IMG/VR virus record: IMGVR_UViG_3300042519_004024
Coordinates: 62,001 to 126,000 of that record
Direction: 5' to 3' (one strand)
Length of the DNA stretch: 64,000 nucleotides
A program made the position numbers and the translations under genes. The notes under the pieces are model-generated. The model worked only from the letters and a program-made list of their open reading frames with translations. It made no database searches and had not been told where the DNA came from. Each line of letters starts with the position of its first letter. The stretch's first letter is position 1. Of this stretch, positions 1,500-57,126 are shown piece by piece.

Positions 1500-1748
1500 T
1501 TAATTTGATCCAGAATAATTTCTTTTATTTTCCATTTTTTCATAATAACCTTCTTTAGAACCTTTCCAATCCCAAGGCAAATTATTTTTCATATTGTATT
1601 CCAACTTATCTTTAGAAATTCCTTTTAATTTCATCATAAGTTTTTTATAAAAAGATTCATCATTATTATCCTCCTTATCTTTTTCTAATATAACTTTTTT
1701 GACAATTCTTGTCAAATCAGTTTCGGTTAATCTTGTAAATCTTTTCAT
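1500..1748 (-). CDS. LTESDL-leader family protein
   Basis: MKRFTRLTETDLTRIVKKVILEK from ATG 1748; TATTTAT at 1757-1763. Confidence 0.8.
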   Translation of the reverse strand: MKRFTRLTETDLTRIVKKVILEKDKEDNNDESFYKKLMMKLKGISKDKLEYNMKNNLPWDWKGSKEGYYEKMENKRNYSGSN

Positions 1749-1774
1749 ACTAATTAATAAATATACCGTTAATC

Positions 1775-1800
1775 TAAAAACCCCCACTTTTGGTGGGGGT
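1775..1800 (-). terminator. Intrinsic terminator after small holin
   Basis: ACCCCCAC-CAAAA-GTGGGGGT followed by T-run on minus strand. Confidence 0.8.
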
Positions 1801-1823
1801 TAGTTACTAATTTTAATAAAAAT

Positions 1824-1991
1824 TTATTTCTTGTCAACAATAGACCAAATAGCCCCTGTTAATGTCATAGCACCACCAACTATTTCAGTAACAGTTGTTT
1901 CATCCACTAAACCTTTCATTACTAAGATACCACCAACAAATGTCAATGCATGTCTGATGATTCCCATAATTTGTTCTTTAGTTAATTTCAT
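1824..1991 (-). CDS. Small two-TM putative holin (Pam3-gp28-like), 55 aa
   Basis: Hand translation MKLTKEQIMGIIRHALTFVGGILVMKGLVDETTVTEIVGGAMTLTGAIWSIVDKK; directly after endolysin; IRHALTFVGG motif. Below ORF-track cutoff. Confidence 0.75.
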   Translation of the reverse strand: MKLTKEQIMGIIRHALTFVGGILVMKGLVDETTVTEIVGGAMTLTGAIWSIVDKK

Positions 1992-2026
1992 AATATAAAT
2001 TTTAAAAGTTTATTTTATAATAAATA

Positions 2027-2851
2027 TCACTTAAGTAAGTTATAGTATTCTTTAAAGTGTTTTATTCTATCGGCAAGTCCTATTGTACCACCATTTACTC
2101 GTTTTGTCACCGCAGTAACTGTAGCATCATCAGCCCCCTTATCACAAATGGACCACAATTTATTTGAGTCGAAAAAGAATGCAGCAGAAGCTAATGGGTA
2201 TTTTGTTGCTACCAAGTCAGGATTTGCAATACAATCTTCACCAATGAACTTAGTAAAACTTGTGTAGTTTGCCTTCCCTGTTAATTGGATATAGCCTCTT
2301 CCTCTGAATTTAAAACCTTCTTTAGACAATTCATCACCATTACCCATTCTTCCACCATAAACTCTTGAAGCAATTTTTTCGGGTTGTCTTGCATATGATT
2401 CAGCAAGGGTTCCTGGAAAGTATTTACCAAATATTTTCTTTAGACCGTCCGCAGAATAGTTTAAATTTTCTGAAACCGCTTTAAATCCGCCTGATTCGTG
2501 TCCACATTGTGAAAGGAAATGTGCAAGTCTAAGGTTATTCGTAATATTGAATTTTTTTGCAGTTTCAGGTATTTGTGCAATAACAACATCAGGAATATGT
2601 CCTTTTAATCTTTCAATATTTAATCCTGTCACTGGTGTAATTACAACGTCTTCTTTAACTACTTGGGTTGTTCCAAACATTTTCGACCAAGTGCCGTCAC
2701 CAACAATACCATCGGCAGTTAATCCGTTTGCTGATTGCCATTCTTTAACTTTTTTTTCAGTGTTAGGACCAAATGAACCGTCTGCAGTTAAACCTAATTT
2801 TGTTTGGAGTTTTTTTACATCGTCTCCTTTCGATCCTACTTTTAATAACAT
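2027..2851 (-). CDS. Endolysin: peptidoglycan-binding domain plus glycoside hydrolase family 19
   Basis: LKVGSKGDDVKKLQ...DGIVGDGTW binding domain; HFLSQCGHESGGF, FRGRGYIQLTGKANY, VTKRVNGG GH19 motifs. Confidence 0.92.
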   Translation of the reverse strand: MLLKVGSKGDDVKKLQTKLGLTADGSFGPNTEKKVKEWQSANGLTADGIVGDGTWSKMFGTTQVVKEDVVITPVTGLNIERLKGHIPDVVIAQIPETAKKFNITNNLRLAHFLSQCGHESGGFKAVSENLNYSADGLKKIFGKYFPGTLAESYARQPEKIASRVYGGRMGNGDELSKEGFKFRGRGYIQLTGKANYTSFTKFIGEDCIANPDLVATKYPLASAAFFFDSNKLWSICDKGADDATVTAVTKRVNGGTIGLADRIKHFKEYYNLLK

Positions 2852-2862
2852 AGTTTTTTGTT

Positions 2863-3540
2863 TTATTGTTTATTTTCTGTTGCGTATTTAATACCCATAA
2901 TGGTTCCTACAATTGAGAATGCGTTTGTTAAAAGAATACCAAAAATGTTAGACCAAGCAGCACTAATAACTTGTGTGTCTTTACCCATAACAAGTGTGAA
3001 CACATAAACACCGGTAGTAATAATACCAACACCAACAATAATATAAAGTGCGACTCTTACTATTGTTGATATTAATTCTGTTTGATTTTTCTTTTGTAGT
3101 AAGTCTAAATCATTTTCGGCGTTTTGTTTGGCGGTTTCAGCCACGATCCTTGCTTGTTCGACTTTAACCATTTCATTTTTTAACTCTTCGGTAAGTCTTA
3201 AATTATCTTGTTTCCACTCATTTAATTCTCTATTTTGAACTTCAAAGGTTAATCTCGATTCTTCAACATTACTTAAACTTTGTTGTAGCTCCTGTAGTAT
3301 TCTTTCATTTTCTTGATTTGCAACCACTAAGTCTTCATTTTGTTTTTGTATTTTTTTTGTCATCTCAAGACGTTTCTTTCTTTTATCTTCGTCTTTTGAT
3401 AAACAATTTTTTAAATACTCTTTAAACTCTTCGTCACCCTCATTGTCAATAAGTTTAGTAATATTACCTTCAAGACCTATACCTTTTTTTTGATACAAAT
3501 CTATTAAAGTTTTTTTAGTATTACTATCTATTTTTATCAT
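2863..3540 (-). CDS. Coiled-coil protein with two C-terminal TM helices
   Basis: Heptad-rich aa 50-150, two hydrophobic helices near C-terminus; 4-nt overlap with response regulator. Confidence 0.8.
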   Translation of the reverse strand: MIKIDSNTKKTLIDLYQKKGIGLEGNITKLIDNEGDEEFKEYLKNCLSKDEDKRKKRLEMTKKIQKQNEDLVVANQENERILQELQQSLSNVEESRLTFEVQNRELNEWKQDNLRLTEELKNEMVKVEQARIVAETAKQNAENDLDLLQKKNQTELISTIVRVALYIIVGVGIITTGVYVFTLVMGKDTQVISAAWSNIFGILLTNAFSIVGTIMGIKYATENKQ

Positions 3541-3974
3541 TTGTAAACTTTAAATGGTAATGTTCTGTTTTTATAACCCTCATAGTCTTTTCTGAATTCT
3601 TCTAAACGAGGTTCAATATCATCTGATTTAATAATCCAGAATTGAGCACCAGCCTGGAGCGCTTTTGCTTGTTCTTCAGATTCATTTGATGATGATATAA
3701 TACCAATAACTACATGATTACCATACTCAAAATTAATTTTTCTAATTAATTCTATACCATCAAAAGAACTTCCTATTATATTTAAATCAACAAACACACA
3801 TTCAGGTTTATCATTATCGTCCCCATTTTGGAACCATTTTTGAAATAGTTTTGCCGCTTCATCAGAACTGCTTAACGCATTTAAAGACAAACTTATGTCA
3901 AGTAACGAACAAGCGTCTTCAAATACCAAATGGAATAAATCCTCGTCATCCACTAATAAAATTGAATCAATCAT
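3537..3974 (-). CDS. Single-domain CheY-like response regulator
   Basis: LLVDDED acidic pocket, VFVDLN phospho-Asp, ISSS switch residue, FWIIKS conserved Lys; no output domain. Confidence 0.92.
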   Translation of the reverse strand: MIDSILLVDDEDLFHLVFEDACSLLDISLSLNALSSSDEAAKLFQKWFQNGDDNDKPECVFVDLNIIGSSFDGIELIRKINFEYGNHVVIGIISSSNESEEQAKALQAGAQFWIIKSDDIEPRLEEFRKDYEGYKNRTLPFKVYK

Positions 3975-3992
3975 TTTTTCTTTTTTTGTTTT

Positions 3993-8310: not shown

Positions 8311-8388
8311 AATTTTGTTTTTTTATTATAATAAATACTCTTGAGGTTACAGAGTTAATTAAATATTGAGCACCTCTATCTCATTTTG

Positions 8389-8461
8389 TTGTCAGTAAAG
8401 GATTCGAACCAATGACACGTCCCTAAAAAGGGATTGCTCTAACCAACTGAGCTAACTGACA
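8389..8461 (-). ncRNA. Aberrant tRNA-Lys-like RNA (6-nt anticodon loop)
   Basis: Perfect acceptor TGTCAGT/ACTGACA, canonical D arm, loop TTTTTA, two T-T mismatches in T stem. Confidence 0.7.
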
Positions 8462-8499
8462 TACCTAATAATAAAACTTTAGTTTTACATTGTCAAGTG

Positions 8500-8573: not shown

Positions 8574-8579
8574 TATTTG

Positions 8580-11022: not shown

Positions 11023-11346
11023 TTAATATTTTCTTCTTGAGTATTTAAAATTTCCGTGTCTCTTTTTGTATGCGTCATAAAATGTTCTACCATACTTTTC
11101 GTCACCAAATAATCTTTTTTTAATGTCTTCAGGTATGTCTTCAAAATTTTCTACTTCACTATATGGATCATAATCAAATTCGTAATAACCAGTATCTTCT
11201 AAGTCCTTATCAAAATATGTGTGCTCACCTTCATCATCAACCCAATGATCAGTATCGCCAAACTTTGCTCTATACTTAGATTCTTTAATGACTTTATTAA
11301 CAATTCTAACTAAATCTGATTCTGTTAGTCTTATAATTTTTTTCAT
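11023..11346 (-). CDS. LTESDL-leader family protein
   Basis: MKKIIRLTESDLVRIVNKVIKES. Confidence 0.85.
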   Translation of the reverse strand: MKKIIRLTESDLVRIVNKVIKESKYRAKFGDTDHWVDDEGEHTYFDKDLEDTGYYEFDYDPYSEVENFEDIPEDIKKRLFGDEKYGRTFYDAYKKRHGNFKYSRRKY

Positions 11347-11355: not shown

Positions 11356-11868
11356 TTAATATCCATGTTTTTTTGGGTACATTATATGTTCTAAATGAGA
11401 AGTATATTCAAAAGTTAAAACATCAAGTACGTCATTAATTCCATTTTTCATTTTTGAATCCTCTTCAAGTGAGTTATATTCATTTTCATAATAACTTATT
11501 AATTCTTCAAAAAGTTTTCCAATCATATTAATATTTGTTTTCCACAACGTCTTCCATTCTTCTTTTTCGTATTGTGAAAGTTCGTCATATTCAATTTCAT
11601 CATTAAATCTTTTTGATGGTCTTCTAGTGAATTTAGACATGTTTCTTTTTCTCCATAAATCATAATCGTGTTGAATGTCTCCATAACGTAAATAATTTCC
11701 TGGGATATTTTTTTCTATAAGGTAATTATTAAACAAATCTATTAACTCCGTTTTAAATTTTTCAATTTCTTCAGGTGTGATTACTTTATAAATTTCAGAT
11801 ATATTATTTTCTTTAATTACTCGTCTAACAATTCTCGCTAGATCGGATTCTGTAAGTCTATTTCTCAT
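11356..11868 (-). CDS. LTESDL-leader family protein
   Basis: MRNRLTESDLARIVRRVIKEN. Confidence 0.85.
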   Translation of the reverse strand: MRNRLTESDLARIVRRVIKENNISEIYKVITPEEIEKFKTELIDLFNNYLIEKNIPGNYLRYGDIQHDYDLWRKRNMSKFTRRPSKRFNDEIEYDELSQYEKEEWKTLWKTNINMIGKLFEELISYYENEYNSLEEDSKMKNGINDVLDVLTFEYTSHLEHIMYPKKHGY

Positions 11869-11882: not shown

Positions 11883-12497
11883 TTATGCATATTCTTCATC
11901 GTCAAAGTCCTCATACTCATCAAATGGGTCCTCACGCCTTTTTGTTATTATCGTCCCTTCACCATCTATTTTACCACCAGTCCCGAATACGTCTTTTGGT
12001 AATTTTCTATACTTTTCAGGTTTATAATCTTCAGGATATCTTTTTTTTTGTATAAAGTCATCCCAACCTTCACCTAATTCTTCATCTCTTCCTTTTGTTT
12101 TTGCAAATGCTTTTTTCAAATCATTAACTGAGTGTCCTCCAATCGCATCGTATGGTTCGTCCTCATCAACTTTATAGAAACCTTCTTTTTCCATTAAGTA
12201 TTCAATATCGTTAGGCAAATCACCATAACCTTCATCACGTAAAGCCATAACAATATCAAATTCACTCATCAAATTAAGGTCGTGTATATCATATTCACAT
12301 TCATTTTCAAGTATATCTCTTGCCTGTTCAATTAAATCTTGAAGTCTTTCCTCACCTCTATCGGTTTGTCCCCACTCTTCATCATCACTATAGTATGGAT
12401 CATACATACTTCTATCTTTATAGTCGTCGTTTTCTTTAATTACCCGTCTAACAATTCTTGCTAAATCTGATTCTGTTAGTCTTATTATTCTTTTCAT
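11883..12497 (-). CDS. LTESDL-leader family protein, acidic
   Basis: MKRIIRLTESDLARIVRRVIKEN. Confidence 0.85.
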   Translation of the reverse strand: MKRIIRLTESDLARIVRRVIKENDDYKDRSMYDPYYSDDEEWGQTDRGEERLQDLIEQARDILENECEYDIHDLNLMSEFDIVMALRDEGYGDLPNDIEYLMEKEGFYKVDEDEPYDAIGGHSVNDLKKAFAKTKGRDEELGEGWDDFIQKKRYPEDYKPEKYRKLPKDVFGTGGKIDGEGTIITKRREDPFDEYEDFDDEEYA

Positions 12498-12499: not shown

Positions 12500-13033
12500 T
12501 TATCTGTTGTTTCTACTTTTATCGGACTTTCCGTAATGGTGTCCTGATTGGTATTTATCATAACCTTTTCTTTTAAACCAAGCGGCGTCTCTAAGAGTAT
12601 TACTCGCTAAAGCATAAACGCCTAAAGCAGCAGCAATTCCCCCACTTATAAACATCGCTGCCGGAACAATTGCTAATGCCGCACCAACTGAACTATAGCC
12701 AATAATTTTATCAATAATACTTCTTATTTCATATTCATTATCACCCATTTCATTTTCATCCTCTTCCGTCAATACAGACTCCAAAGAATCTTTAACTATT
12801 GATTGTAAAGATTCAATACCGTTACTTTCTATAAAATCACGTAACATATCTTGCTCTTCAGGACTCAATTGTTCTGTAGCCTCTTTACTACTTTGTTCCA
12901 ATTCCATTTTTGAAAAATCGACATCCGATTCCATATCTTCAGATTGTGAAATCCATTCTTCTTCGTTTTCTTTAATCACTCGTCTAACAATTCTTGCTAG
13001 ATCAGATTCTGTAAGTCTTATAATTTTTTTCAT
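12500..13033 (-). CDS. LTESDL-leader family protein with hydrophobic hairpin
   Basis: MKKIIRLTESDLARIVRRVIKEN; hydrophobic SSVGAALAIVPAAMFISGGIAAALGVYALA. Confidence 0.85.
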   Translation of the reverse strand: MKKIIRLTESDLARIVRRVIKENEEEWISQSEDMESDVDFSKMELEQSSKEATEQLSPEEQDMLRDFIESNGIESLQSIVKDSLESVLTEEDENEMGDNEYEIRSIIDKIIGYSSVGAALAIVPAAMFISGGIAAALGVYALASNTLRDAAWFKRKGYDKYQSGHHYGKSDKSRNNR

Positions 13034-13063: not shown

Positions 13064-14020
13064 TTAAAAACCAAAGTTTAATCTTAAATCGTCTAATTTA
13101 ATTACCTCGGTAACTTCAACAAAATTATCTTCCATACCAACACTATCTCTTCTATCCTCCATTGTCATCTCATCATCTTCAATATATCTTACATGAATTT
13201 CAAGATTAAATGGAACAATTTCTTCATTTGATTCAATTTCATTAAAATCTTCCACTGAAAAATATTTACCTTCGTATTGACTGAACCCATCTCCAATCAT
13301 TATGTTGAAACTTTTTCTTATATTATACCTGTAATCGTCAGTTTCAACTTCTCCATTTCCATCACAATTACTACAAGTACTTGATCCATACCCATCACAC
13401 CATCCACATTCTTCATCTCCAGCACCTTCACATGATGGACATTCAAAATTACCTGTCCCACCACAATCACTACATCTATCTTCACCGGTTCCATCACAAT
13501 GAACACACTCTACCTCCACTTCAACCTCATCACCTTCATCATCTTCTTCAGTATCGGTTTCACTTCCTCTACCATCACAATAACGACATTCTTCATTACC
13601 TGATCCATCACAAGTATCACAATCTATAGTTGTTTCTCCATCACAACTACGACATTCTCGTCTACCTGACCCATCACAGTGTTCACATTGTTCATCACCT
13701 GAACCGTAACAGTAATCACATTCATTTTTAATTACTTCAGTGTCTTCATACAATTCAATAACTGCAACGTATAGGTTCATTATTATTCCTTCCATTGCAA
13801 CAGGATCCATTTTTCTATTTAAAATAAAATATGTCATAACACATACTTTAATTCTTTCTTGTGTGGAATTGACTTTTGATAATAATAATTCGGCTAAATG
13901 ATCACTTTTTATGATATTTATTATTTTTGAAATACCGATAAATACGTTTCCGTATTCGGTTTTCATTAAATTAGCTAAATTATTAGCTATTGAGTATAAT
14001 TTTTTAAATTCAGGTGACAT
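13064..14020 (-). CDS. Protein with ten CxxCxGxG zinc-finger repeats
   Basis: Ten motifs at 11-aa spacing, 5+5 around an acidic loop; no J domain. Confidence 0.85.
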   Translation of the reverse strand: MSPEFKKLYSIANNLANLMKTEYGNVFIGISKIINIIKSDHLAELLLSKVNSTQERIKVCVMTYFILNRKMDPVAMEGIIMNLYVAVIELYEDTEVIKNECDYCYGSGDEQCEHCDGSGRRECRSCDGETTIDCDTCDGSGNEECRYCDGRGSETDTEEDDEGDEVEVEVECVHCDGTGEDRCSDCGGTGNFECPSCEGAGDEECGWCDGYGSSTCSNCDGNGEVETDDYRYNIRKSFNIMIGDGFSQYEGKYFSVEDFNEIESNEEIVPFNLEIHVRYIEDDEMTMEDRRDSVGMEDNFVEVTEVIKLDDLRLNFGF

Positions 14021-20474: not shown

Positions 20475-20777
20475 TTACCTTCCGATAATCAATTCATTAA
20501 AATCAATGTCATTTGCACCTTTTATTTTACCCTCAAGTTCATCGTACATATAAGATTTAACTACCGATGTTACTGACTGTTCCGCTTGTGCAATTTTTGT
20601 TTCCATCCAATCTTCAAGCTCTTCACCATCTTCCATTAATTCCCACATTTTATAGCAAAGTGTTGCCATTGTAAACAATTGTTGTTTAGCCATGTAAGAA
20701 CCATCTTGATCGCTTTCCTTAAGGATTTTAACCATTCGTTCCAATTGTTTTTCTGTTATTATCACTTTTTTACTCAT
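20475..20777 (-). CDS. Leader-family acidic protein
   Basis: MSKKVIITEKQLERMVKILKES from ATG 20777. Confidence 0.8.
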   Translation of the reverse strand: MSKKVIITEKQLERMVKILKESDQDGSYMAKQQLFTMATLCYKMWELMEDGEELEDWMETKIAQAEQSVTSVVKSYMYDELEGKIKGANDIDFNELIIGR

Positions 20778-22096: not shown

Positions 22097-22465
22097 TTAC
22101 CATGTTCTGCAAGCCCAATATCTTGGTTTCCATCTTGGTCCAGGATTATCACAATTATGTCTCGCTCTAAATGAACGTCTCCTCTCAGGATTGTTCTTTT
22201 TAATCACCATTCGTTTTCCTTTTGCGGATTTTCCACCAAACCCAAAATTCACTTTAACAACTTTACCTTTATCGTTTTTAACATATACCTTGAACTTTTT
22301 GATGTCTCCTTGCATAATCTTACCAAGTTGAACTTTTCTTCCTTGGTATTCGGCTTCATTTAAAAAATCAATGTTTTCTACTGTTCCGTAAACGTCCTCA
22401 TAAATTACAGTATTTCTTTTAAGTTCTTCGGAAATTACTTTTTTTATAATATCATTAATATTCAT
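22097..22465 (-). CDS. Leader plus basic DUF6321-like domain
   Basis: MNINDIIKKVISEE; KKFKVYVKN...VKVNFG...NPERRRSFRARHNC...RYWACRTW. Confidence 0.7.
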   Translation of the reverse strand: MNINDIIKKVISEELKRNTVIYEDVYGTVENIDFLNEAEYQGRKVQLGKIMQGDIKKFKVYVKNDKGKVVKVNFGFGGKSAKGKRMVIKKNNPERRRSFRARHNCDNPGPRWKPRYWACRTW

Positions 22466-24709: not shown

Positions 24710-25063
24710 ATGAAATTATTAATTAATGATAACCTATTTAGATGTAAGGTTTGTAACACACCTGAATCGATTACAAAGGGTATGATGAAAAGGAGATTCG
24801 AAGGTTTTGATTGTATGGTTTTTTTAATGCCGGAAAAAAAGAACCAAGAATTTTGGATGTATGATTGTTTAATACCTTTAGATATTGTTATGGTTAATGA
24901 TAATATTATAGAAACCATTAATTCAAATTGTCCTCCATGTAAAGACACATCATCTTGTGAATATTATAATGGTTTCGGGAATGTTGTTTTAGAATTTGAA
25001 GGTGGTACCTGTAACACTTTAGGTATTAAATCAGGTGACAAGATAAAAATTGGGTTGAGTTAA
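24710..25063 (+). CDS. DUF192-family protein
   Basis: TPESITKGMM, MVFL, FWMYDCLIPLDIV, VLEFEGG. Confidence 0.85.
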   Translation: MKLLINDNLFRCKVCNTPESITKGMMKRRFEGFDCMVFLMPEKKNQEFWMYDCLIPLDIVMVNDNIIETINSNCPPCKDTSSCEYYNGFGNVVLEFEGGTCNTLGIKSGDKIKIGLS

Positions 25064-26571
25064 CCGTTTTTTATTTTACTATTTAATATTTCAACAAACT
25101 TATCTCTTATGTCTTTTGTTAGTTCTGTCGTTCCTCTTCCTTGTTTTGGATTTGCAAGTGATTCAACATCAATACCTTCTCTCTTCATTCCACTAATAGC
25201 CGCTTGAATTTGTTTTTCAGAAAGTTTTCTAAACCTTAAAAGTTTTTGTTTTATATCTTGTATGAATGTATTTGGTCCTTCATAAAATGCAATTGGTATA
25301 GCTTCTGCCGGTAAGTCTTTGGTGTATGGTTTATCGTAACCACTATAAACAAAACCAATACCCGAAATAGTTGTTATACACTTATGTCCACCAGCATTTG
25401 CAACCAAATAGTCATATGCACTTATTGTATTTGTTTCAGGATTATAAGAAGGCATTTCCCCATAAATTGCGTCCATATCTTTTTGTGTAAACCCAACAGA
25501 ATCTTTTGTTGCCTTTTTTTCAGAAACTTTTTTAATTATCTTATAAGGTAAAATTACTTGTTCAAGTTCAGGTTTGAAACTTAAGAGTACCTCGTCTTTT
25601 ATTTTTCCTAAATCAACCCCTTTTAGTTCCCTATCCGCTTTATAAGGATTACAAGATGCTTGAACCAAACCTACAGGTGCTCCAAGCCCTGTCACTAAAA
25701 AGTCAGCATCAGGGTTTAAGTCAAATGGTGTATATCTATCATATGAACCCTTTTTCATTGATCCTAAACCAAATTGGTATAGTACTCCGCCTTCTTTTTG
25801 GATTACCCCTTCTTTTGATCTATCTTCAAGATATTTTTCTTGGTTTTTTTGCATCGTCTCTACTGAAGCATATCCTTGATCTTTTGCAATTTTTGTTATT
25901 GTATTATATAAATTTTCTAATGATGGTTCGCACTTCATTACTAGGTATTCAAGTAAATCTCTACCATCAACCTTATCATTTTTATAAGCCAAAAGTAGTT
26001 TATTTACAACAAGCCCCATCATCATTTTATTTCTTCTAACACTTTGATCCTTATCGTATTTAAAAATAAAATTCATTACCATTTTTGTTGTAATCTGATT
26101 TGTGGCAAAATTTGCAGAATCAATTGTTGATACGACATATAAATCTTCATCTTTAAATAAATCTTTTGGTGAAATTGTTTGAGAAATTGTTTCAACATTT
26201 GATCTTGAGTGTTTGAAACTGGTTTTTGTATCTTTTTCAACACCAACTTGTGAGTCGTGGTGATCAGTATGAATTTCAAACATTGGTTTTCCGTGTGCAA
26301 AATCAACAAGAACAGGCATAATTTCTCCACTTCCATCCGGTTTTTTAACTGCCCATTCTTTTTCACCGTATTGGATTATTTCGCAATCAACAACTTTAAA
26401 CCCTTGGTTTTCAAGGTACTTTTTCATTGCAATTGCAGTTGTAACTCCATCCAAATCTTGATGAAAGTATATTTTTGCTTTCTTGTACCTTTTAAGAAGT
26501 TCATTTATATCTCTAATACCTGACTCTTTAATAAGTTGTTTTAATTGACTTTCAGTTATAATAATTTTCAT
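25060..26571 (-). CDS. DHH-family phosphoesterase with leader peptide
   Basis: MKIIITESQLKQLIKES; YFHQDLDG, VDFAH, TDHH motifs; NAGGHK. Confidence 0.85.
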   Translation of the reverse strand: MKIIITESQLKQLIKESGIRDINELLKRYKKAKIYFHQDLDGVTTAIAMKKYLENQGFKVVDCEIIQYGEKEWAVKKPDGSGEIMPVLVDFAHGKPMFEIHTDHHDSQVGVEKDTKTSFKHSRSNVETISQTISPKDLFKDEDLYVVSTIDSANFATNQITTKMVMNFIFKYDKDQSVRRNKMMMGLVVNKLLLAYKNDKVDGRDLLEYLVMKCEPSLENLYNTITKIAKDQGYASVETMQKNQEKYLEDRSKEGVIQKEGGVLYQFGLGSMKKGSYDRYTPFDLNPDADFLVTGLGAPVGLVQASCNPYKADRELKGVDLGKIKDEVLLSFKPELEQVILPYKIIKKVSEKKATKDSVGFTQKDMDAIYGEMPSYNPETNTISAYDYLVANAGGHKCITTISGIGFVYSGYDKPYTKDLPAEAIPIAFYEGPNTFIQDIKQKLLRFRKLSEKQIQAAISGMKREGIDVESLANPKQGRGTTELTKDIRDKFVEILNSKIKNG

Positions 26572-26697: not shown

Positions 26698-27072
26698 TTA
26701 ATTACGGTAGGCATAAAAACCAAACCTAAATCCCTGAGCGGTTAAATCTTTAACTTTTTGTACTAAATTGTCAAATCCTACAATATTATATTTACCAACT
26801 AGCATCATTAATTCATTTAAAAATTCAGCATCAGTTTCATTACCTTGTCCAGAGCTCACAAGTTCTGAATTATAACTAGGTGCTCCTTTTCTTATTTCAC
26901 CATATGTTTTTCCAACAGAAGCCATTTCATCATCACTATTTGGTGTAAAATCAGATGACGAATCTTTTGGTCTACCATATCCGGTATTGTTACCCTCTTC
27001 CTCAGTTTCTTTAATGATTTGTCTAACAATATGTGATAAATCTCTTTCTGTTAATTTTACAATTCTTTTCAT
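26698..27072 (-). CDS. LTESDL-leader family protein
   Basis: MKRIVKLTERDLSHIVRQIIKET. Confidence 0.85.
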   Translation of the reverse strand: MKRIVKLTERDLSHIVRQIIKETEEEGNNTGYGRPKDSSSDFTPNSDDEMASVGKTYGEIRKGAPSYNSELVSSGQGNETDAEFLNELMMLVGKYNIVGFDNLVQKVKDLTAQGFRFGFYAYRN

Positions 27073-29355: not shown

Positions 29356-30531
29356 TTAATTATATCTCATGACGTGATACCAAGTATCTCCTATTTTATA
29401 TTCATCGTCATTACCGTCATAACCATTTAGTATGTTTCCGTAACCATCACTTCTAATCACATAATCAATAAGCTCGTCCATGTCAACAAAATCTAATATA
29501 AAGTCTTTGTCATATCCACGATTTTCTATAAAACTAGCAAAATCATCAGCATATTCGTCAACTTGTGATTCTATAGCGTCTTCTATATCATCTTCACTAT
29601 AATCGCCTTCAGGGTTTTCTTTAATATCTTCAATTAATTGTTCAGAATCATATATTTCATCTTCAATTTGAGATATCTGTTCTTCACTTAGACTTTGGGT
29701 GTTTAATTTATTTTTTAAATCAAATATCTTTTTTTCATAAATTTCAACATACTTTTCTTGTTGTGCTGACAACTCTTTACTTATATTCCATCCTTCAGGA
29801 TCATCTCTTATTGCGTCTTCAAAATCATTGTATAACCATCTTCTAACTTCATCGTCATTTAAATGTTGTTCCCAAACGTGTGAATAAAAGGCTTCATAAC
29901 CCATTTGTTCAATATCGGATTCTAATTTTTCGTAAGCAGCGTCACCAATTTCATTATCCGCATATACTAACCATTCTGATTCAAATTTATCTTCACCTAA
30001 CCAAGTATAATACCCTCCTTTACCATAGTGTTGGTATTTTTCTTTATAAAGATTATATTTATCTTCACCTTCCTCTACAATACCACTATTTAATAAATGA
30101 TCGAATATCGCTTCAGTTTCTTCAGAAACTTTTTCACCGTTTTCAACCTTCCAGGCACCTTCTTCTCTTAATTCTTCTTGTATTTCGCGTTTTATTTTTA
30201 AAACTTTTTCCCTTTCTAAACGATACATTTTAGAACGATGATAATAAAAGCTACCCCTAACTTTAGATTTGTCAAAATAAGGAACTTGTGAATTACCTAA
30301 ATCAAGACCACCATTAACATAGTCAATACTATCAATATTTGTTACATCATCGTCAATTACTAAATCACCAGTAATTGCAATTTTTTTACCCCTATATTGT
30401 GGGAACATTTTAATCATTGCTCCATCACCGTTAACGTACTTTAAAAGATCGTTATACTCATCAGGTGAGACTTCAACCCATTCTTCAGATTGTTCACTTA
30501 AAACCTTTCTAATAATATTTCTTACAAACAT
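29356..30531 (-). CDS. Leader-family acidic protein
   Basis: MFVRNIIRKVLSEQ; TATTTAT 30537-30543; D/E-rich. Confidence 0.8.
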   Translation of the reverse strand: MFVRNIIRKVLSEQSEEWVEVSPDEYNDLLKYVNGDGAMIKMFPQYRGKKIAITGDLVIDDDVTNIDSIDYVNGGLDLGNSQVPYFDKSKVRGSFYYHRSKMYRLEREKVLKIKREIQEELREEGAWKVENGEKVSEETEAIFDHLLNSGIVEEGEDKYNLYKEKYQHYGKGGYYTWLGEDKFESEWLVYADNEIGDAAYEKLESDIEQMGYEAFYSHVWEQHLNDDEVRRWLYNDFEDAIRDDPEGWNISKELSAQQEKYVEIYEKKIFDLKNKLNTQSLSEEQISQIEDEIYDSEQLIEDIKENPEGDYSEDDIEDAIESQVDEYADDFASFIENRGYDKDFILDFVDMDELIDYVIRSDGYGNILNGYDGNDDEYKIGDTWYHVMRYN

Positions 30532-34365: not shown

Positions 34366-35721
34366 TTAAGAGAATAAATGGAAATTTTCGTCAGTATCTA
34401 TTCTTTCTCTTAAAGCGTCAGGGATTACATTACTTACATTACTATTCTTTAAGTTAATTACTGTTAATCTTGGTAGATTTGCAATACAACTAGGTAATTT
34501 TTCAAGAGTAGGGTTATCAGGTAATGATAAAAATTGTAGTTTATCTAAATTACATATAGCTTCAGGTATTTTTGAGACACACCCAACTAAATGTAATGCT
34601 GATAAATTTTTAAATTTACCGATACTTTCAGGTATAGGTAAACTAAATGGTTCTCCACCTTTTCTAGTAAATTCAAGTCTTTCAATATTTTCAGGTAATG
34701 TTTCAAAAAACTCAGGGAAACCGTAAAGAACGATGAATTTTGATGCCGAATCACCAGGGTAATTTACCGATACTTTCTTACCGTTATTTTGTGATAATCC
34801 TTGCATAAACTGTGGTTTGAAGTACTCCTTCAATTCAGGTTCTTGTTTACGTAAGAAATCAACTAAATCAATTTGTCTATCTGATGGATCCATGTATTGA
34901 TTTGATGGGAAGTGGAATTGGTATCTTAATGCTGGTAGTCCTGATTTTTCACCGACATCCATACTTCCTGTGAATTTTGTAGGTGAATTAGGTATCACAA
35001 CATATAAAGGACCATCTTTAATGTATCTATCAAACCAAGTTAAACCTGGTGATGATGTACACCATCTTGTTTCACCTCTTTGTGGTTCTAAGTAATATCC
35101 ACCATAAAAACATGCGGCGTCTTTACCAAGTTGTCCTGTATCTGAAATTTTTACAACAGTCCAATTACCAAATTTCTTAACTTCTTCGGCACCTGGATGT
35201 TGGTAAGTTGTTGACGCTTCTTTTTTCTCGTCTGCAGTTGCTTTAGTCTTCTCTAATGAAAAGTCTTTAACTTGATCGTAAAGAGTTTCAGGGGTTAACT
35301 TATTAATATCACGGTATTCTTGTTGTAATCTATTTTTATATCTTTCAAACTTCATCAAGTCACCCGTAACTTTGTACAAGTCTTCCATAAATAACTCTTG
35401 GTATTGTTGATACGCACCTTTATATCTTGGTGAGTCAGGTTCAACGTCCAAATTTGTTGGGGTTACAAAATTTTTAAGTATCCATTGGGTGTATTTGCCA
35501 ATTTTTACTTTTTCCATATCTTCGGGTTTAGCGGTTCCTGCATCCATTCCTTCAGGAATTCTTGATGTTGGATCGGCAGCGATGATGTCAAATAAAATAT
35601 TAAAAGGCATCATACCCTTTCTTGTTTCTTTTTTAGGTTTAACATATTTGTCAAATAGCACCTGAAATCTTGAACTCTCAATGATTAAATCTCTTAAAAT
35701 GCTCGTAAATCTAATAGCCAT
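34366..35721 (-). CDS. Leader-family protein with C-terminal leucine-rich repeats
   Basis: MAIRFTSILRDLIIES; ETRWCTS; IPESIGKFKNLSALHL, IPEAICNLDKLQFLSL, LPSCIANLPRLTVINL. Confidence 0.85.
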   Translation of the reverse strand: MAIRFTSILRDLIIESSRFQVLFDKYVKPKKETRKGMMPFNILFDIIAADPTSRIPEGMDAGTAKPEDMEKVKIGKYTQWILKNFVTPTNLDVEPDSPRYKGAYQQYQELFMEDLYKVTGDLMKFERYKNRLQQEYRDINKLTPETLYDQVKDFSLEKTKATADEKKEASTTYQHPGAEEVKKFGNWTVVKISDTGQLGKDAACFYGGYYLEPQRGETRWCTSSPGLTWFDRYIKDGPLYVVIPNSPTKFTGSMDVGEKSGLPALRYQFHFPSNQYMDPSDRQIDLVDFLRKQEPELKEYFKPQFMQGLSQNNGKKVSVNYPGDSASKFIVLYGFPEFFETLPENIERLEFTRKGGEPFSLPIPESIGKFKNLSALHLVGCVSKIPEAICNLDKLQFLSLPDNPTLEKLPSCIANLPRLTVINLKNSNVSNVIPDALRERIDTDENFHLFS

Positions 35722-40171: not shown

Positions 40172-41575
40172 TTATTGTGTTTTTTTACCGTATGAAATTA
40201 AATCTTTCATTTTTTCAATGTCAGAAATAACTTTTCTTTCATTTTGTGATTCTAATTTCATCATTATTTTAGATACTTTATCTGTTGTTTCACCACTTTT
40301 ATCGGAAACTACGGGTTGAGGTGATTTGTTGTAAGCCTTTCTTTTAATTTTAGCCAACAAGTTATCTTTTCTTATTTTATTTCTTCTTTGGTTTGTAGGT
40401 GTCTCTACCGCATTTGCCCATTCAGGGTTATTTCCCGTTCTTGAAGATCCAACTGTTAAATCATCAACCCATTTTTCGTCAGGGTGAATTTCATCATAAT
40501 CTAAATTTTCTAAAGCCGCTGCTGTAAAATTATCAATATATTCGCCAACAGCGTCTGAAGGAATATAAGCCATTTTTGACATTTTTGCTAATTCTCCATT
40601 TCCTTTTGGAAAATGTCTTGGGTTCATTTCATAACCACCTTTAGAACCATCCTTTAGGTAGTCCTTCATTTTCTTAACTACGCTATCAATGTAATCGTCA
40701 TTTTCTTTTTTAGACTTTTCTTGGTTAGCTCTTGTTAATTTAATAGGATCACTTTTACGTTTTGTTGTTGTTTTTTTCTTTTTCTTCTTTTCTTCTAAAA
40801 CAATATTTTCAATTATATCTATAATTTCGTGTTCACTAAAAATAAATCTTTCTCCTGTTGATTCGTCTAAGTATAACTCATATGTCTCACCACACTCTTT
40901 ACACTCACTCTCTTTACGATTATTAAGTTTAACTCCTCTACCTAATAAAATATCTTTTCTTGTCACTTTTTTGTCACCACTTAAATCAGGAAATCCACTT
41001 TCTTTTGTTTCAGTTTTTTTACCTCTTCTTAAAAGTTTAAAATCTTCAGCATCGATTCTATTATTTTTATTTCTATCGATTCTTTTTTGATTACCTTTTA
41101 ATGATTCTCCAAGTTCACTATCTTTACTTTTCATATGATGTTTCATCATTCTTATATTTGGCATATCATCATCTTCAAATGATGTTTCATCTTCATCGTC
41201 ACCTCTAAGTAATTTTTCAATATCCTCAATAGACATTGGGCTTTTAAATCTTTTTTTACCAAATCTTGGGTGTCCGTCATCCATCCCCCCTAATTCTTGA
41301 ATATCACCTTCATACATTGATCCACCACATTCCGAACATTCTCCTTCATACATTGATCCACCACATTCCGAACACTCATGTCCATTATCACTTCCTTCGT
41401 ACATTGATCCGCATTCCATGCATTCGTTTTCATACATATTTTTAGAACCACATTCTGAGCAAATTTGTTTTTTCATTTTACTATCTTCAAAAATTTTATT
41501 TTTAATAATGCCAATTCTTTTATCAATTTCTTCTGAAATTATTCTATCAACAATATTATTTATTTCTCTATTCAT
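40172..41575 (-). CDS. Leader-family protein with CxECG-SMYE repeats and EF-hand-like motifs
   Basis: MNREINNIVDRIISEE; five CxxC motifs; DRNKNNRIDAED and DLSGDKKVTRKD. Confidence 0.8.
   Translation of the reverse strand: MNREINNIVDRIISEEIDKRIGIIKNKIFEDSKMKKQICSECGSKNMYENECMECGSMYEGSDNGHECSECGGSMYEGECSECGGSMYEGDIQELGGMDDGHPRFGKKRFKSPMSIEDIEKLLRGDDEDETSFEDDDMPNIRMMKHHMKSKDSELGESLKGNQKRIDRNKNNRIDAEDFKLLRRGKKTETKESGFPDLSGDKKVTRKDILLGRGVKLNNRKESECKECGETYELYLDESTGERFIFSEHEIIDIIENIVLEEKKKKKKTTTKRKSDPIKLTRANQEKSKKENDDYIDSVVKKMKDYLKDGSKGGYEMNPRHFPKGNGELAKMSKMAYIPSDAVGEYIDNFTAAALENLDYDEIHPDEKWVDDLTVGSSRTGNNPEWANAVETPTNQRRNKIRKDNLLAKIKRKAYNKSPQPVVSDKSGETTDKVSKIMMKLESQNERKVISDIEKMKDLISYGKKTQ
41307..41374. 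repeat. 32-nt exact direct repeat, 36-nt period
   Basis: CCTTCATACATTGATCCACCACATTCCGAACA at 41307-41338 and 41343-41374. Confidence 0.9.
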
Positions 41576-54412: not shown

Positions 54413-54627
54413 CACTTATCAAATAATTTAAAATCTTCGTTAACATTACCACATTCATTACACATGTAAGTTGGAAAAGGTACGATAGTGTCTTCAGAAC
54501 TACCTGTTAATATTTTTGATACTTTTTTTAAAATTGTTACTTCTTTGAAGTAAACTGATTTACATTTTTCACACTCAACAGTTGGTTGATCTTTTAAGTT
54601 GATTTTTGGTTTAATGATGTCTTCCAT
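54412..54627 (-). CDS. Zinc-ribbon protein
   Basis: CEKC...CNECG. Confidence 0.8.
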   Translation of the reverse strand: MEDIIKPKINLKDQPTVECEKCKSVYFKEVTILKKVSKILTGSSEDTIVPFPTYMCNECGNVNEDFKLFDK

Positions 54628-54738
54628 TATTTTATAATATAATTTACGTTTATTTTAATTGTTGAACAGTCCCAACTTGTGTTGGTGTACCATATAGGTG
54701 TTATCGTACTTTCCATGATTTAATATAATTTATTTTAT

Positions 54739-55596
54739 TTATTTAGTCAAATATTCCTTGATGTTCATCTTCATAATTGTGTCCACAACCTCTTTTGAAA
54801 CTCGGTATTCGGTAAAATCTTGCTCATCAGTAAGATGTACTATTACACAACCATAAAAACTGATACCCTCATATTTGGTTCCTTCTAACATTTTTACAAG
54901 TAATTTACCATATAGCGGTAACTGTGTATTATAGTGTCCAAGAGCATTGTTTGGTAAATACTTAAATGGTTCTCTCATTGGTTTTGTGTAGTCGTTGGTT
55001 TCCATGTTTTTCTTTTTGTTGGTTTTCCAATCAGTTATGACAATACCAAACCCCGTTCTTTGTTTATTAAACATTAACCAAGCTTTATCAGGTTGTCCTG
55101 TATACCCTAACTCAGGATGACCTAAAACTATCTCCGTATCTAAAAGTACGGCACCTCTATCTTCCATAAGTTTTAAAAACTTATATCCAGCCTTAATCAT
55201 ACGATCACCTTTCATAATCATTTCCATATCACATTCATAGATTGGTTGTCTGACTTGTTTGTTTAAACCACTTCTTTTTAATGTTTCAATTTCCAATTCA
55301 TAGTGAACCCTACTACCCATATTTGTGGATATTTTTCCCGCTTCTTCCCATTCTGCAAGTAAAGTTTGCATAACATAAGGATCCCCTTTTGCTTTATTTC
55401 TTGCAGCCTCCTCGGTTGGGAAATCGTCATAGAATAACTTCATTACTTTTGACACTGATGGGAAATCGTCTTTGATTTCTCCATCGGTATCTTTCATGGT
55501 GTATCTATGTTTATCTTCTTCAAAAGTTAAACAAAGTTCTTTTTGTCTCTCTGATAAGATATCACGTATTTCTTCTGCTATTTTTTTTAAATTCAT
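54739..55596 (-). CDS. PD-(D/E)XK exonuclease
   Basis: GSRVH, TEIVL, GQPDK, ITDWKT, HYNTQLPLY. Confidence 0.85.
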   Translation of the reverse strand: MNLKKIAEEIRDILSERQKELCLTFEEDKHRYTMKDTDGEIKDDFPSVSKVMKLFYDDFPTEEAARNKAKGDPYVMQTLLAEWEEAGKISTNMGSRVHYELEIETLKRSGLNKQVRQPIYECDMEMIMKGDRMIKAGYKFLKLMEDRGAVLLDTEIVLGHPELGYTGQPDKAWLMFNKQRTGFGIVITDWKTNKKKNMETNDYTKPMREPFKYLPNNALGHYNTQLPLYGKLLVKMLEGTKYEGISFYGCVIVHLTDEQDFTEYRVSKEVVDTIMKMNIKEYLTK

Positions 55597-56513
55597 TGTT
55601 TTTCTTGTATGAAATATTGTGTTATATGCCCTCTTAAATCACAAACATCCTTATCTTTTGGTAGTTTGACGAGTTTTACTCTGTTGTAAAGGGTACCTCC
55701 ATTTAGTTTATCGTATAATTTTTTTGCGTCATCATATGCGTCACCATCTAAACAAATTATAATGTCTTTTTTCGCCTTTTCGTAAAGTTTTTCCCACATA
55801 TTATCATTAATGTACTTTCCAAGAAGTGCAATTGAATTGTCTAAAAAGAATGAGTCAAATACCCCCTCAACAATATATATGTCTTTTTTAAAATCTATTA
55901 AACTTTCATTAAAAATTAAAAAATCTTTTGCCGCTTCAGGATTTTTGTATTTTAGTTTTGATTTTGGGTTCCAAGATCTTGATACAAAAAAGTTTAGTTC
56001 TCCTTTTTTATTATATGATGGTACTATGATTCTTCCGGCATATTCCCCGTCAATACATAACCCAATTTGGTACTTATCTATAATTTCTTGAGTAATTCCT
56101 CTTTTTTTAAGATAGTTAAAAGCCTCTTTTCTTGGTATATGTAATGGGTGTATTTCGTCAAACTTTTTATACTCTTTAGGTAATTCTAATTTTTTAAATA
56201 CCTTTTCTTTTTTTTCAAATTTATCAGGTCTGATTAACTTATAGGTCTTTTTGTCTTTTTTAGAACCATACTTATCAATCAATTTACCTAAATGTCCGTG
56301 AGTTTCGTGAGTTTCCGCACAAGCCCAACATTTATATACATGATTTTGATAATTAATTTCAAGATTACCTTTTCCGTCAGTTTTAGACAATCCTTTAATA
56401 TCATAAGAACAAACAGGACAATCCACCGATATTTGTCCAGAATATTCATTAACATTTTTTGGTTCTCCAAAAATTGTTTGTATTAAATCTATTAAAAGTG
56501 ATTCATCTTCCAT
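55593..56513 (-). CDS. DNA primase (Zn finger plus TOPRIM)
   Basis: CPVC...CWAC; YIVEGVFD; CLDGDA. Confidence 0.88.
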   Translation of the reverse strand: MEDESLLIDLIQTIFGEPKNVNEYSGQISVDCPVCSYDIKGLSKTDGKGNLEINYQNHVYKCWACAETHETHGHLGKLIDKYGSKKDKKTYKLIRPDKFEKKEKVFKKLELPKEYKKFDEIHPLHIPRKEAFNYLKKRGITQEIIDKYQIGLCIDGEYAGRIIVPSYNKKGELNFFVSRSWNPKSKLKYKNPEAAKDFLIFNESLIDFKKDIYIVEGVFDSFFLDNSIALLGKYINDNMWEKLYEKAKKDIIICLDGDAYDDAKKLYDKLNGGTLYNRVKLVKLPKDKDVCDLRGHITQYFIQEKQ

Positions 56514-56588
56514 ATATTAAAAATAGTAATTTTATATGGAATGTCAATTATCGGTTATTTAAACGATAATCTAAAATATCGTATAAAT

Positions 56589-56614
56589 AAAAAACCCACC
56601 TTTTTGGGGTGGGC
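56589..56614 (-). terminator. Intrinsic terminator
   Basis: CCCACC(C)-CAAAA-AGGTGGG plus T-run. Confidence 0.75.
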
Positions 56615-56634
56615 TAATAAAATATTTTATTTTT

Positions 56635-57126
56635 TTATTCGTCAGATGCGTCACAATAATCATAACAAATATCTTCTAATTTTGGACATTCTATTTCAAA
56701 TTGTTGTCTTCCACCAAAGAATTTTTTCTTACCTCTTAGGTATAGTTGATTCTCTTCGCAATCATAAAATAATTCTAATTTACTATCCATTCCTGGTTCC
56801 CAATTTTCTCCTCGTTCAACTAAAAATCTATGTAGTTTTTTGTTACAACCCTCTTCAGGACCATTATCAAAAAATTGAGGATTGTTTGACATGTCTCTAA
56901 CTTCTAATATACTGTTACAACCTAACTCATCTTCTGTTTGTGATTCGCAAGCCGTTCCACCTAAAATTACTTCCATGATTTCTAATCCACAACTTGGGTC
57001 AACTATTGTAAATTGTTTGCCTCTAACTTTCATATCTAATTTAGAAATTCCAGATTCCGATTCTTTAACAATTCGTCTAACCAATCTAGTTAGATCCGAT
57101 TCAGTAAGTCTAATAATTTTTTTCAT
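56635..57126 (-). CDS. LTESDL-leader family protein, Cys-rich cargo
   Basis: MKKIIRLTESDLTRLVRRIVKES; eight Cys. Confidence 0.85.
   Translation of the reverse strand: MKKIIRLTESDLTRLVRRIVKESESGISKLDMKVRGKQFTIVDPSCGLEIMEVILGGTACESQTEDELGCNSILEVRDMSNNPQFFDNGPEEGCNKKLHRFLVERGENWEPGMDSKLELFYDCEENQLYLRGKKKFFGGRQQFEIECPKLEDICYDYCDASDE

What the first reader, a model, noticed from the sequence alone, without database searches (positions are those of the whole stretch)
1500..57126. Shared N-terminal leader on about 20 unrelated late proteins: probable capsid-targeting propeptide
SEEN: seven ORFs start with near-identical MKxIxRLTESDLxRIVxxVIKE (starts 1748, 11346, 11868, 12497, 13033, 27072, 57126). 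About 13 more have looser amphipathic leaders with [ILV]-x-E (starts 252, 18618, 20777, 21577, 22071, 22465, 26571, 30531, 35721, 41575, 42087, 43646, 46323). Downstream domains are unrelated, and most genes or their operons follow TATTTAT. KNOWN: T4 internal proteins carry a capsid-targeting sequence removed by gp21 at (I/L)-x-E. INFERENCE: a modular address label for packaging and injecting effectors such as a DHH phosphoesterase, LRR protein and peptidoglycan binder.
Basis: partly seen in the sequence, partly recalled or inferred. Interest (0 to 1): 0.82.

Follow-up and report, generated by a model that had tools for sequence, protein, structure and literature searches.

The report
Shared N-terminal tag on jumbo-phage proteins
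Seven otherwise unrelated small proteins of an uncultured freshwater jumbo phage begin with the same 22-residue helix, which marks about ten thousand protein families in related phages and is most likely a T4-style address label that loads proteins into the capsid and is then cut off; this has not been shown experimentally.

Summary
The core observation holds. Seven minus-strand ORFs start with MKKIIRLTESDLxRIVRRVIKE, and what follows the tag is unrelated. A leader HMM finds exactly these seven in all six frames.

Of the 13 "looser" leaders, about six have support:
- Four carry a short tag, h-I-[KR]-[KR]-[IV]-[LI]-x-E (22465, 30531, 35721, 41575).
- Two carry a compressed tag (26571, 20777).
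- Seven have no support.

The tag is selected at the protein level and stops being conserved right after Glu22. It matches 9,867 cluster representatives in public data, almost all from uncultured phages of Bacteroidota.

The window is part of a ~287-kb "bS21" jumbo phage. Relatives carry a T4-like head module: gp20 portal, gp23 capsid protein and an S77 (gp21-type) prohead protease with its catalytic motifs intact. In at least six divergent loci, tagged genes lie inside that module, beside the protease and scaffold genes. The tag ends in [I/V/L]-x-E, the gp21 cleavage motif.

The T4 capsid-targeting reading is therefore the best explanation (~0.6), but no proteomic evidence exists. Points against it: chromosomal copies in Segatella, internal copies of the tag, and mostly acidic cargo in the window. 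Neither "late" timing nor an "effector" role is shown.

The parts
1500..1748 (-). Tagged gene, 82 aa. The leader is encoded at 1683-1748 and the cargo is basic (pI 9.1).
11023..11346 (-). Tagged gene, 107 aa, last gene of a four-gene tandem array. The leader is encoded at 11281-11346.
11356..11868 (-). Tagged gene, 170 aa. Its leader is two residues shorter (MRN-RLTESDL...) and is encoded at 11809-11868.
11883..12497 (-). Tagged gene, 204 aa, with acidic cargo (pI 4.2). The AF2 model shows a helix at residues 9-22, a disordered linker at 23-47 and a small helical domain at 47-104.
12500..13033 (-). Tagged gene, 177 aa, first of the tandem array. The cargo ends in two hydrophobic helices. TATTTAT lies 20 nt upstream.
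26698..27072 (-). Tagged gene, 124 aa, with the most divergent of the seven leaders (KLTERDLSHIVRQIIKE).
56635..57126 (-). Tagged gene, 163 aa, with 8 Cys in the cargo. It lies beside a RuvC-like gene and tail-fibre-like genes.
29356..30531 (-). Short-tag candidate, 391 aa (MFVRNIIRKVLSE|QSEEW). The tag is conserved in orthologues down to 52% identity, with a variable residue before the Glu.
22097..22465 (-). Short-tag candidate, 122 aa (MNINDIIKKVISE|E). It is the best non-core hit of the leader HMM (E=0.07).
40172..41575 (-). Short-tag candidate, 467 aa (MNREINNIVDRIISE|E).
34366..35721 (-). Short-tag candidate, 451 aa: a leucine-rich-repeat protein (…SILRDLIIE|SS). This is the weakest of the four short tags.
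25060..26571 (-). DHH-like protein, 503 aa, with a compressed tag (MKIIITESQLKQLIKE|SGIRD). Orthologues swap this for other tags, all ending in L-[IL]-x-E.
20475..20777 (-). 100-aa ORF with a compressed tag (MSKKVIITEKQLERMVKILKE|SD). Support is weak.
13064..14020 (-). DnaJ-type zinc-finger protein directly upstream of the tandem array, in the same order in relatives. It is probably the first gene of that operon and carries no tag.

Best explanation
The 22-residue leader is a capsid-targeting propeptide of the T4 type. It forms a stable amphipathic helix with a capping box (L-T-E-S-D-L) followed by I-V-x-x-V-I. During head assembly this helix docks the tagged protein onto the scaffolding core of the prohead. 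The S77 (gp21-family) prohead protease then cuts after the terminal [I/V/L]-x-Glu22, and perhaps also after L-T-Glu9. That frees a highly variable cargo inside the capsid, either to be ejected with the DNA or degraded as core filler.

Shown here:
- The tag exists, is modular and is selected at the protein level.
- It has a sharp boundary at Glu22.
- It co-occurs with, and lies in the same gene neighbourhoods as, a catalytically intact T4-type protease, scaffold and gp23 module.

Inferred, not shown: docking to the core, cleavage, packaging, ejection and any effector role. Short tags (h-I-[KR]-[KR]-[IV]-[LI]-x-E) on larger proteins probably work the same way.
For: 1. Modularity. Seven identical-type leaders sit on unrelated cargo. 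In relatives, 166 tagged proteins fall into 133 cargo clusters. The leader profile matches 9,867 representatives of 50%-identity clusters.

2. Protein-level selection. Four to six synonymous codons are used at the invariant L, S and R positions. Third-position identity is 0.615 against 0.842 for positions 1+2.

3. Boundary. Information content falls from above 3 bits to below 1 bit right after Glu22. The residue before Glu varies freely (K, N, S, R, M, E...), while the one before that is I, V or L. Orthologues have indels immediately after Glu22. This matches the gp21 specificity L/I-x-E described in PMC9026906.

4. Protease. A related contig carries terminase, Portal_T4, bS21, Peptidase_S77, scaffold and Gp23 5-10 kb from a tagged gene. 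Its protease is 32% identical to T4 gp21 (E 2e-21). ELNHP, SSRG and the N-terminal L-x-E are invariant across T4 and five phage loci.

5. Gene neighbourhood. Tagged genes lie between or beside the protease, scaffold and capsid genes in L101, L120, L121, L050, L004 and L016. These loci cover both leader subtypes, with proteases only 41-88% identical.

6. Link to the window. A 281-kb contig has both that protease and an SbcD 80% identical to the window's.

7. Structure. The AF2 model shows helix, disordered linker, then a small domain.

8. Precedent. T-even internal proteins are diverse and share only a capsid-targeting sequence (PMC3012670, PMC9026906).
Against: - There is no proteomic or biochemical evidence. 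No cultured phage in the INPHARED set carries the tag.
- The head module of the window's own genome was not retrieved.
- A conserved chromosomal gene of Segatella bryantii (WP_039869731.1) and one in Prevotella sp. MA2016 carry the tag in contexts that do not look like phage.
- About a fifth of motif occurrences among the top profile hits are internal, and some lack a Met.
- Six of the window's seven cargoes are acidic (pI 4.2-5.1), unlike the basic T4 internal proteins.
- Many tagged genes cluster beside a ClpB-like AAA+ gene, which could point to a different partner.
Confidence: 0.6

Rival explanations
1. The leader is an uncleaved docking helix for a shared partner other than the prohead core. 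One candidate is the phage's ClpB-like AAA+ unfoldase. Another is a host protein to which many small phage proteins are recruited.
For: - A ClpB-like gene lies beside a hot spot of tagged genes in at least 12 related loci.
- Internal copies of the motif exist.
- A bacterial chromosomal gene carries the tag without any phage head nearby.
- Amphipathic N-terminal helices are generic binding elements.
Against: - The ClpB-adjacent hot spot is a single conserved genome position next to the terminase gene, so it counts as one observation.
- The window's seven tagged genes are not near such a gene.
- This model does not explain why conservation ends exactly at h-x-Glu with a free middle residue.
- It does not explain why tagged genes are inserted between the protease and scaffold genes.
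Confidence: 0.17
2. The leader is a self-association or stabilising helix with no targeting role, for example one that forms oligomers or protects small proteins from degradation. It would have spread among small accessory genes by recombination.
For: - The sequence has a strong helix-forming design with a capping box and a hydrophobic stripe.
- Tandem arrays and fused two-copy proteins show frequent recombination between tagged genes.
Against: - A tag kept almost unchanged on about 10,000 unrelated cargo clusters, across freshwater and gut phage lineages, implies one common interaction partner.
- The association with the head module is unexplained.
Confidence: 0.12
3. The conserved element works at the nucleic-acid level. 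It could be a translation-initiation or mRNA element linked to the phage's own ribosomal protein bS21, or a recombination site for swapping gene cassettes. Under this view the peptide is incidental.
For: - The phage clade encodes bS21 (PMC9723584).
- Many genes have a TATTTAT element only 11-12 nt before the ATG, which implies very short 5' leaders.
- The conserved 5' ends would in practice promote cassette exchange.
Against: - Synonymous sites vary freely, including switches between codon families for Leu, Ser and Arg, while the amino acids stay invariant.
- Internal copies are in frame and conserved as peptide.
Confidence: 0.03

Closest known systems
Capsid-targeting sequences (CTS) of phage T4 internal proteins IPI, IPII, IPIII and Alt, removed by the gp21 prohead protease
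   Same: - A short N-terminal peptide is shared by otherwise unrelated, fast-evolving small proteins.
- The peptide ends in a hydrophobic-x-Glu site.
- The phage has gp20, gp21 and gp23 homologues.
- Tagged genes form variable tandem loci.
- The literature already proposes the CTS as a general way for T4-like phages to load diverse proteins (PMC9026906, PMC3012670).
   Different: - The tag is 22 residues against 10-19 in T4, with its own conserved sequence and no evident homology to the T4 CTS.
- The host phylum is Bacteroidota.
- The repertoire is far larger: at least 7 tagged genes per 64 kb and about 10,000 cargo clusters overall.
- The cargo is often acidic rather than basic.
- Some tagged genes sit inside the head module itself.
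- Internal and bacterial-chromosome copies exist.
- Nothing has been tested experimentally.
Propeptides of head, inner-body and ejection proteins in giant phages phiKZ and SPN3US, cut by gp175/gp245 (distant gp21 relatives)
   Same: Both are jumbo phages that pack many different proteins into the head after cleavage C-terminal to Glu by a gp21-related protease (PMC9026906, PMC10052503).
   Different: - Those propeptides are long and are not one shared sequence.
- To my knowledge their cleavage motif has a small residue (S/A/G) at P3. Here P3 is I, V or L, as in T4.
- The protease here is a clear S77 member: 32% identical to gp21 and a Pfam PF03420 match.
Cargo-loading peptides of bacterial microcompartments and encapsulins
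   Same: These work alike. A short amphipathic helix plus a flexible linker addresses unrelated proteins to the inside of a protein shell. Their sequences loosely resemble the tag's second half.
   Different: Those tags are not removed and they bind shell proteins of non-viral compartments. No shell genes were seen among the window proteins scanned. The resemblance is recalled from memory and was not tested.

Membership tests
T4-type capsid-targeting propeptide system | One short N-terminal peptide shared by otherwise unrelated proteins of the same phage | tested here: met
   Seven ORFs match at E<=7e-14 and the next hit is at E=0.39. The cargoes are unrelated. Relatives have 133 cargo clusters among 166 tagged proteins.
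T4-type capsid-targeting propeptide system | The tag ends in the gp21 cleavage motif L/I-x-E, and similarity stops there | tested here: met
   P3 is I (124), V (37) or L (15) of 176. P2 is variable. P1 is Glu in 141 of 176; the rest are the longer H subtype, which has Glu four residues further on. Information content drops below 1 bit after this position. This is a sequence-level match only.
T4-type capsid-targeting propeptide system | A gp21-family (Peptidase_S77) prohead protease with a gp20/gp23 head module in tag-bearing phages | tested here: met
   PF03420, PF07230 and PF07068 occur on a tag-bearing contig. The protease is 32% identical to T4 gp21. The His and Ser motifs are invariant. 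Six loci hold tag and protease or capsid gene together.
T4-type capsid-targeting propeptide system | The same protease is present in the genome this window comes from | tested here: inconclusive
   The head module lies outside the window. The window's own contig (213,924 bp in IMG/VR, 286,821 bp elsewhere) did not appear in the capped protease searches. A 281-kb relative with 80% SbcD identity has the protease.
T4-type capsid-targeting propeptide system | Tagged proteins are physically inside proheads or virions | not testable with these tools
   No cultured phage carries the tag, and no proteome is available.
T4-type capsid-targeting propeptide system | The tag is removed by the prohead protease | not testable with these tools
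   This needs N-terminal proteomics or an in vitro cleavage assay.
T4-type capsid-targeting propeptide system | Sequence homology of the tag to the T4 CTS | not tested
   The T4 internal-protein sequences were not fetched. Lengths differ: 22 residues here against 10-19 in T4 (PMC9026906).
Any curated protein family (Pfam, PHROGs) or solved structure | A significant profile match covering the leader | tested here: not met
   Pfam gives no family for the seven proteins. PHROGs gives nothing below E=0.018, and none of those hits cover the leader. A PDB profile search gives only chance 8-residue matches with E>0.8. The ESM Atlas neighbours are all unnamed viral clusters.
Sec/Tat/lipoprotein signal peptides | A hydrophobic core of about 10-15 uncharged residues after a short basic N-region | tested here: not met
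   The consensus has charged residues throughout (K2, K3, R6, E9, D11, R14, K17, R18, E22), so no uncharged stretch is long enough.

The most novel reading that the evidence does not exclude
The tag is the address code of a very large cargo system, not a small T4-like curiosity. Under this reading, jumbo phages of Bacteroidota load dozens of different tagged proteins per capsid from a pool of about 10,000 families. The tag would then be a ready-made handle for finding injected anti-defence and takeover proteins in uncultured phages. The tag-bearing genes kept in Segatella/Prevotella chromosomes would be host decoys that get packaged into invading phage heads, or domesticated cargo. A variant of this reading has the neighbouring ClpB-like unfoldase take part in loading or unloading the tagged proteins.
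Probability: 0.12. Interest if true: 0.85.

Novelty: new variant of a known kind. Interest (0 to 1): 0.6.

Why it matters
If the tag marks capsid cargo, one 22-residue profile would pick out thousands of proteins that uncultured jumbo phages of Bacteroidota carry in their heads. These phages are abundant in lakes, rumen and gut. Such proteins are the likeliest candidates for first-strike anti-defence and host-takeover factors, and almost all lack any annotation.

It would also extend the T4 capsid-targeting principle far outside the T-even phages. That gives a natural tag for loading foreign proteins into capsids of Bacteroidota phages. The idea can be tested directly with one protease, one leader-reporter fusion and one viral-fraction proteome.

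Tried and rejected
- Megablast of 20 kb of the window against isolated phages gave no match.
- tblastn of the leader, and of a whole gut-type tagged protein, against isolated phages found nothing relevant.
- Pfam and PHROGs searches on the seven proteins found nothing. A PDB profile search and the ESM Atlas gave no lead.
- A literature search for the string LTESDL returned zero papers.
- I tried to find the protease on the window's own contig with two capped scans and an exact look-up of bS21. None succeeded.
- The context of a rumen 348-kb contig was uninformative, and one look-up returned only a 946-bp contig.
- I considered and rejected a Sec-type signal peptide (the leader is too charged), an RNA- or DNA-level element (synonymous sites are free) and chance (shuffles).
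- No protein had to be read through a stop codon.


Full report
**What is in the window**

Nearly all genes are on the minus strand and G+C is about 30%. Seven minus-strand ORFs, with ATG at 1748, 11346, 11868, 12497, 13033, 27072 and 57126, begin with the same 22 residues. The consensus is MKKIIRLTESDLxRIVRRVIKE, and 11868 is two residues shorter.

A profile of the seven was searched against all 1,158 stop-to-stop segments in six frames. It returns only those seven (E 3e-18 to 3e-14), and the next hit is at E=0.39. The back-translated DNA pattern has 5 exact matches against none in 100 shuffles. Beyond residue 24 the seven proteins show no significant similarity to each other.

Four of them (13033, 12497, 11868, 11346) form a tight tandem array behind a DnaJ-type zinc-finger gene. 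The same gene order occurs on a 270-kb metagenomic contig.

**The looser leaders**

With a profile built from 159 diverse leaders, the five best non-core hits among 77 window proteins are 22465, 41575, 26571, 30531 and 20777. All five match at the N-terminus, but individually they are not significant (E 0.07-2.2).

The second half of the leader can be written as [LIVM][LIV]x[KRQDN][LIVT][LIV]xE. It occurs 13 times in 17,931 residues, and 11 of those start within the first 20 residues: the seven core ORFs plus 22465, 30531, 35721 and 41575. Shuffles give a mean of 0.17 and a maximum of 3. The motif was written after seeing the data.

Two independent checks support these short tags:
- 120 orthologues of 30531, down to 52% identity, all keep h-I-[KR]-[KR]-[IV]-[LI]-x-E with a freely varying x.
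- Orthologues of the DHH-like protein 26571 carry interchangeable N-terminal modules, such as MKIIITESQLKQLIKE, MKKLIKE and MKNLIRKIIKEETTKLLNE. All end in L-[IL]-x-E directly before the conserved SGIRD.

The other seven proposed leaders have no support.

**How the tag behaves elsewhere**

- A search limited to residues 1-40 of the 12497 protein found 820 database proteins.
In 135 of them the motif starts exactly five residues after the Met.
- A 30-column profile matched 9,867 representatives of 50%-identity clusters at E<=1e-3, and 757 at E<=1e-10, out of 1.84 billion.
- 166 complete tagged proteins have a median length of 138 aa and fall into 133 cargo clusters.
- Of the 62 longest, only five have any Pfam match: one each of NUDIX, PG_binding_1, DUF6576, DUF7809 and DUF6241.
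- A second subtype (MNKKLIRLTESDLHRIVKESVNRVLKE) occurs in rumen and gut material.
- In 185,579 species genomes there are only about 22 true hits. All are in Bacteroidota, mostly Prevotellaceae MAGs. The remaining hits are chance matches in unrelated proteins.

**Nature of the constraint**

Invariant Leu, Ser and Arg positions use four to six codons, including both codon families. Third-position identity is 0.615 against 0.842 for positions 1+2. Selection therefore acts on the peptide.

Information content is above 3 bits through Glu22 and below 1 bit from the next residue on. The residue before Glu22 is highly variable, and the one before that is I, V or L. Orthologues of 12497 have insertions and deletions exactly after Glu22.

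The AlphaFold model of that family shows a helix at residues 9-22, a disordered stretch at 23-47 and a small helical domain at 47-104 (pLDDT about 84). By inspection, the L-T-E-S-D-L segment reads as a helix capping box with a hydrophobic staple.

**What phage this is**

The window holds the following:
- 24-25 tRNA genes and a GOLLD RNA;
- a PAS/GAF histidine kinase with a receiver protein, and a sigma-70 gene;
- three DNA methylases, SbcCD, a primase and a RuvC-like gene;
- an amidase, a GH19 endolysin and tail-fibre-like genes.

It is not a recognisable late block. The window's SbcD is 100% identical to one on a 213,924-bp IMG/VR contig, and two of its tagged proteins occur on a 286,821-bp contig.

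A tagged gene on a related contig lies 5-10 kb from Terminase_6N, Portal_T4, ribosomal protein bS21, Peptidase_S77, a 558-aa scaffold-like protein and Gp23. This is the conserved block described for the freshwater Bacteroidetes "bS21 phages" (PMC9723584). A 281-kb contig carries both that protease (91% identical) and an SbcD 80% identical to the window's. The head module of the window's own genome was not retrieved.

**Link between tag and head assembly**

The protease is 32% identical to T4 gp21 (E 2e-21). Across T4 and five phage loci, ELNHP, SSRG and an N-terminal L-x-E are invariant. PMC9026906 flags that N-terminal motif in T4 as fitting gp21's own cleavage logo. The capsid protein is homologous to gp23 and has an N-terminal extension with several h-x-E sites, including VIKE.

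In local searches of the tag-bearing loci, tagged genes turned out to lie inside the head module:
- L101 and L120: between the protease and the scaffold gene.
- L121, L050 and L004 (gut subtype): flanking the protease.
- L016: three tagged genes next to the capsid gene.

These proteases are only 41-88% identical to one another, so the association holds across deep divergence and both tag subtypes. According to PMC9026906, gp21 cuts after L/I-x-E, and the T4 internal proteins carry 10-19-residue N-terminal targeting sequences that bind the core and are then removed. According to PMC3012670, T-even internal proteins are highly diverse and share only that sequence.

**Weighing it**

The T4-type reading explains most of what is seen:
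- the tag's modularity;
- the exact position and form of its boundary;
- the variable tandem loci;
- the neighbourhood with protease and scaffold genes;
- tags on proteins such as a peptidoglycan binder that have no secretion signal.

It remains an inference, because no particle proteome or cleavage assay exists and no cultured phage has the tag.

Several observations fit it poorly:
- A tag-bearing gene is conserved in Segatella bryantii (WP_039869731.1), and another occurs in Prevotella sp. MA2016. Both lie among ordinary chromosomal genes.
- 36 of 183 motif occurrences in the top profile hits are internal. Some are plain fusions of tandem genes, and others lack a Met.
- Six of the window's seven cargoes are acidic.
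- A ClpB-like AAA+ gene lies beside a hot spot of tagged genes in at least 12 loci, which keeps a different binding partner possible.

My estimates are about 0.6 for the capsid-targeting propeptide, about 0.17 for an uncleaved docking helix with another partner, about 0.12 for a self-association or stabilising helix, and about 0.03 for a nucleic-acid-level element.

**TATTTAT**

The heptamer is enriched before genes: 18 in 73 upstream windows, against 4.2 ± 2.1 in shuffles and 7 for its reverse complement. Nine of the 18 lie exactly 11-12 nt before the ATG, often just after a hairpin and T-run.

It precedes four of the seven core genes, while three others sit downstream in the same array. It also precedes the histidine kinase gene, the zinc-finger gene and a large unannotated gene (57794-60007) next to the tail-fibre-like genes. 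It therefore looks like a general promoter element giving very short 5' leaders. It is not a mark of tagged genes, and it is no proof of late expression.

**Novelty**

The principle is known from T4. This tag, its length and sequence, its host range and its scale are not described in the literature I could search. Nor does it match any Pfam or PHROG family or any solved structure. I rate it a new variant of a known kind.

Noticed in passing
window 23407-23815 (-): A full-length GOLLD RNA (Rfam RF02032, 329 bits against a gathering score of 150) lies between small ORFs and near the tRNA arrays.
   Followed up: no
window 8388-10089, 14879-18311, 20127-20201 (-): There are 24-25 tRNA genes in three arrays. 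ARAGORN reports odd anticodon loops for two of them (8388-8461, 8944-9029). Rfam adds one more at 10015-10089.
   Followed up: no
window 3537-6116 (-): The phage encodes a two-component pair: a GAF/PAS histidine kinase (707 aa) followed by a receiver-domain protein. The pair is in the same order in a 270-kb relative.
   Followed up: partly
window 46525-47340 (-): A sigma-70 family gene with regions 1.2, 2 and 4.
   Followed up: no
window, upstream of starts 252, 6116, 14020, 22465, 26571, 30531, 41575, 46323, 47953, 60007: TATTTAT sits at a fixed 10-12 nt before the start codon, often right after a GC hairpin and T-run. This suggests promoters that give nearly leaderless mRNAs, in a phage clade that encodes its own ribosomal protein bS21.
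   Followed up: partly
proteins P0123, P0134, P0147-P0181, P0236, P0238 (orthologues of window 25060-26571): In relatives the DHH-like protein is fused to a C-terminal SET domain (PF00856) or to a GNAT acetyltransferase domain.
   Followed up: no
L163:5602-7818; also L005, L012, L028, L033, L047, L053, L060, L073, L105, L108, L113: A phage ClpB-like protein with two AAA+ domains lies beside a hot spot of tagged genes just upstream of the terminase gene.
   Followed up: partly
L148:6932-7195 (Segatella bryantii DSM 11371); L155:5795-6220 (Prevotella sp. MA2016): Single genes carrying the gut-type leader lie in bacterial chromosomes among ordinary genes (a GH2 glycosidase, a cyclophilin). The Segatella gene (WP_039869731.1) is conserved within the species.
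   Followed up: partly
proteins P0241-P0260, P0065, P0095, P0104; L004:6177-7133: Many database proteins carry two copies of the leader motif. Some are read-through fusions of tandem genes. In others the internal copy has no Met.
   Followed up: partly
window 12500-13033 and 29356-30531: Right after the tag, both proteins continue with E-x-x-E-E-W-[IV]. Part of the linker may therefore be shared between a full-tag family and a short-tag family.
   Followed up: no
L330:9622-9927: In a 348-kb rumen phage contig, the gene next to a tagged gene has a weak match to Tad8, an anti-defence family.
   Followed up: no
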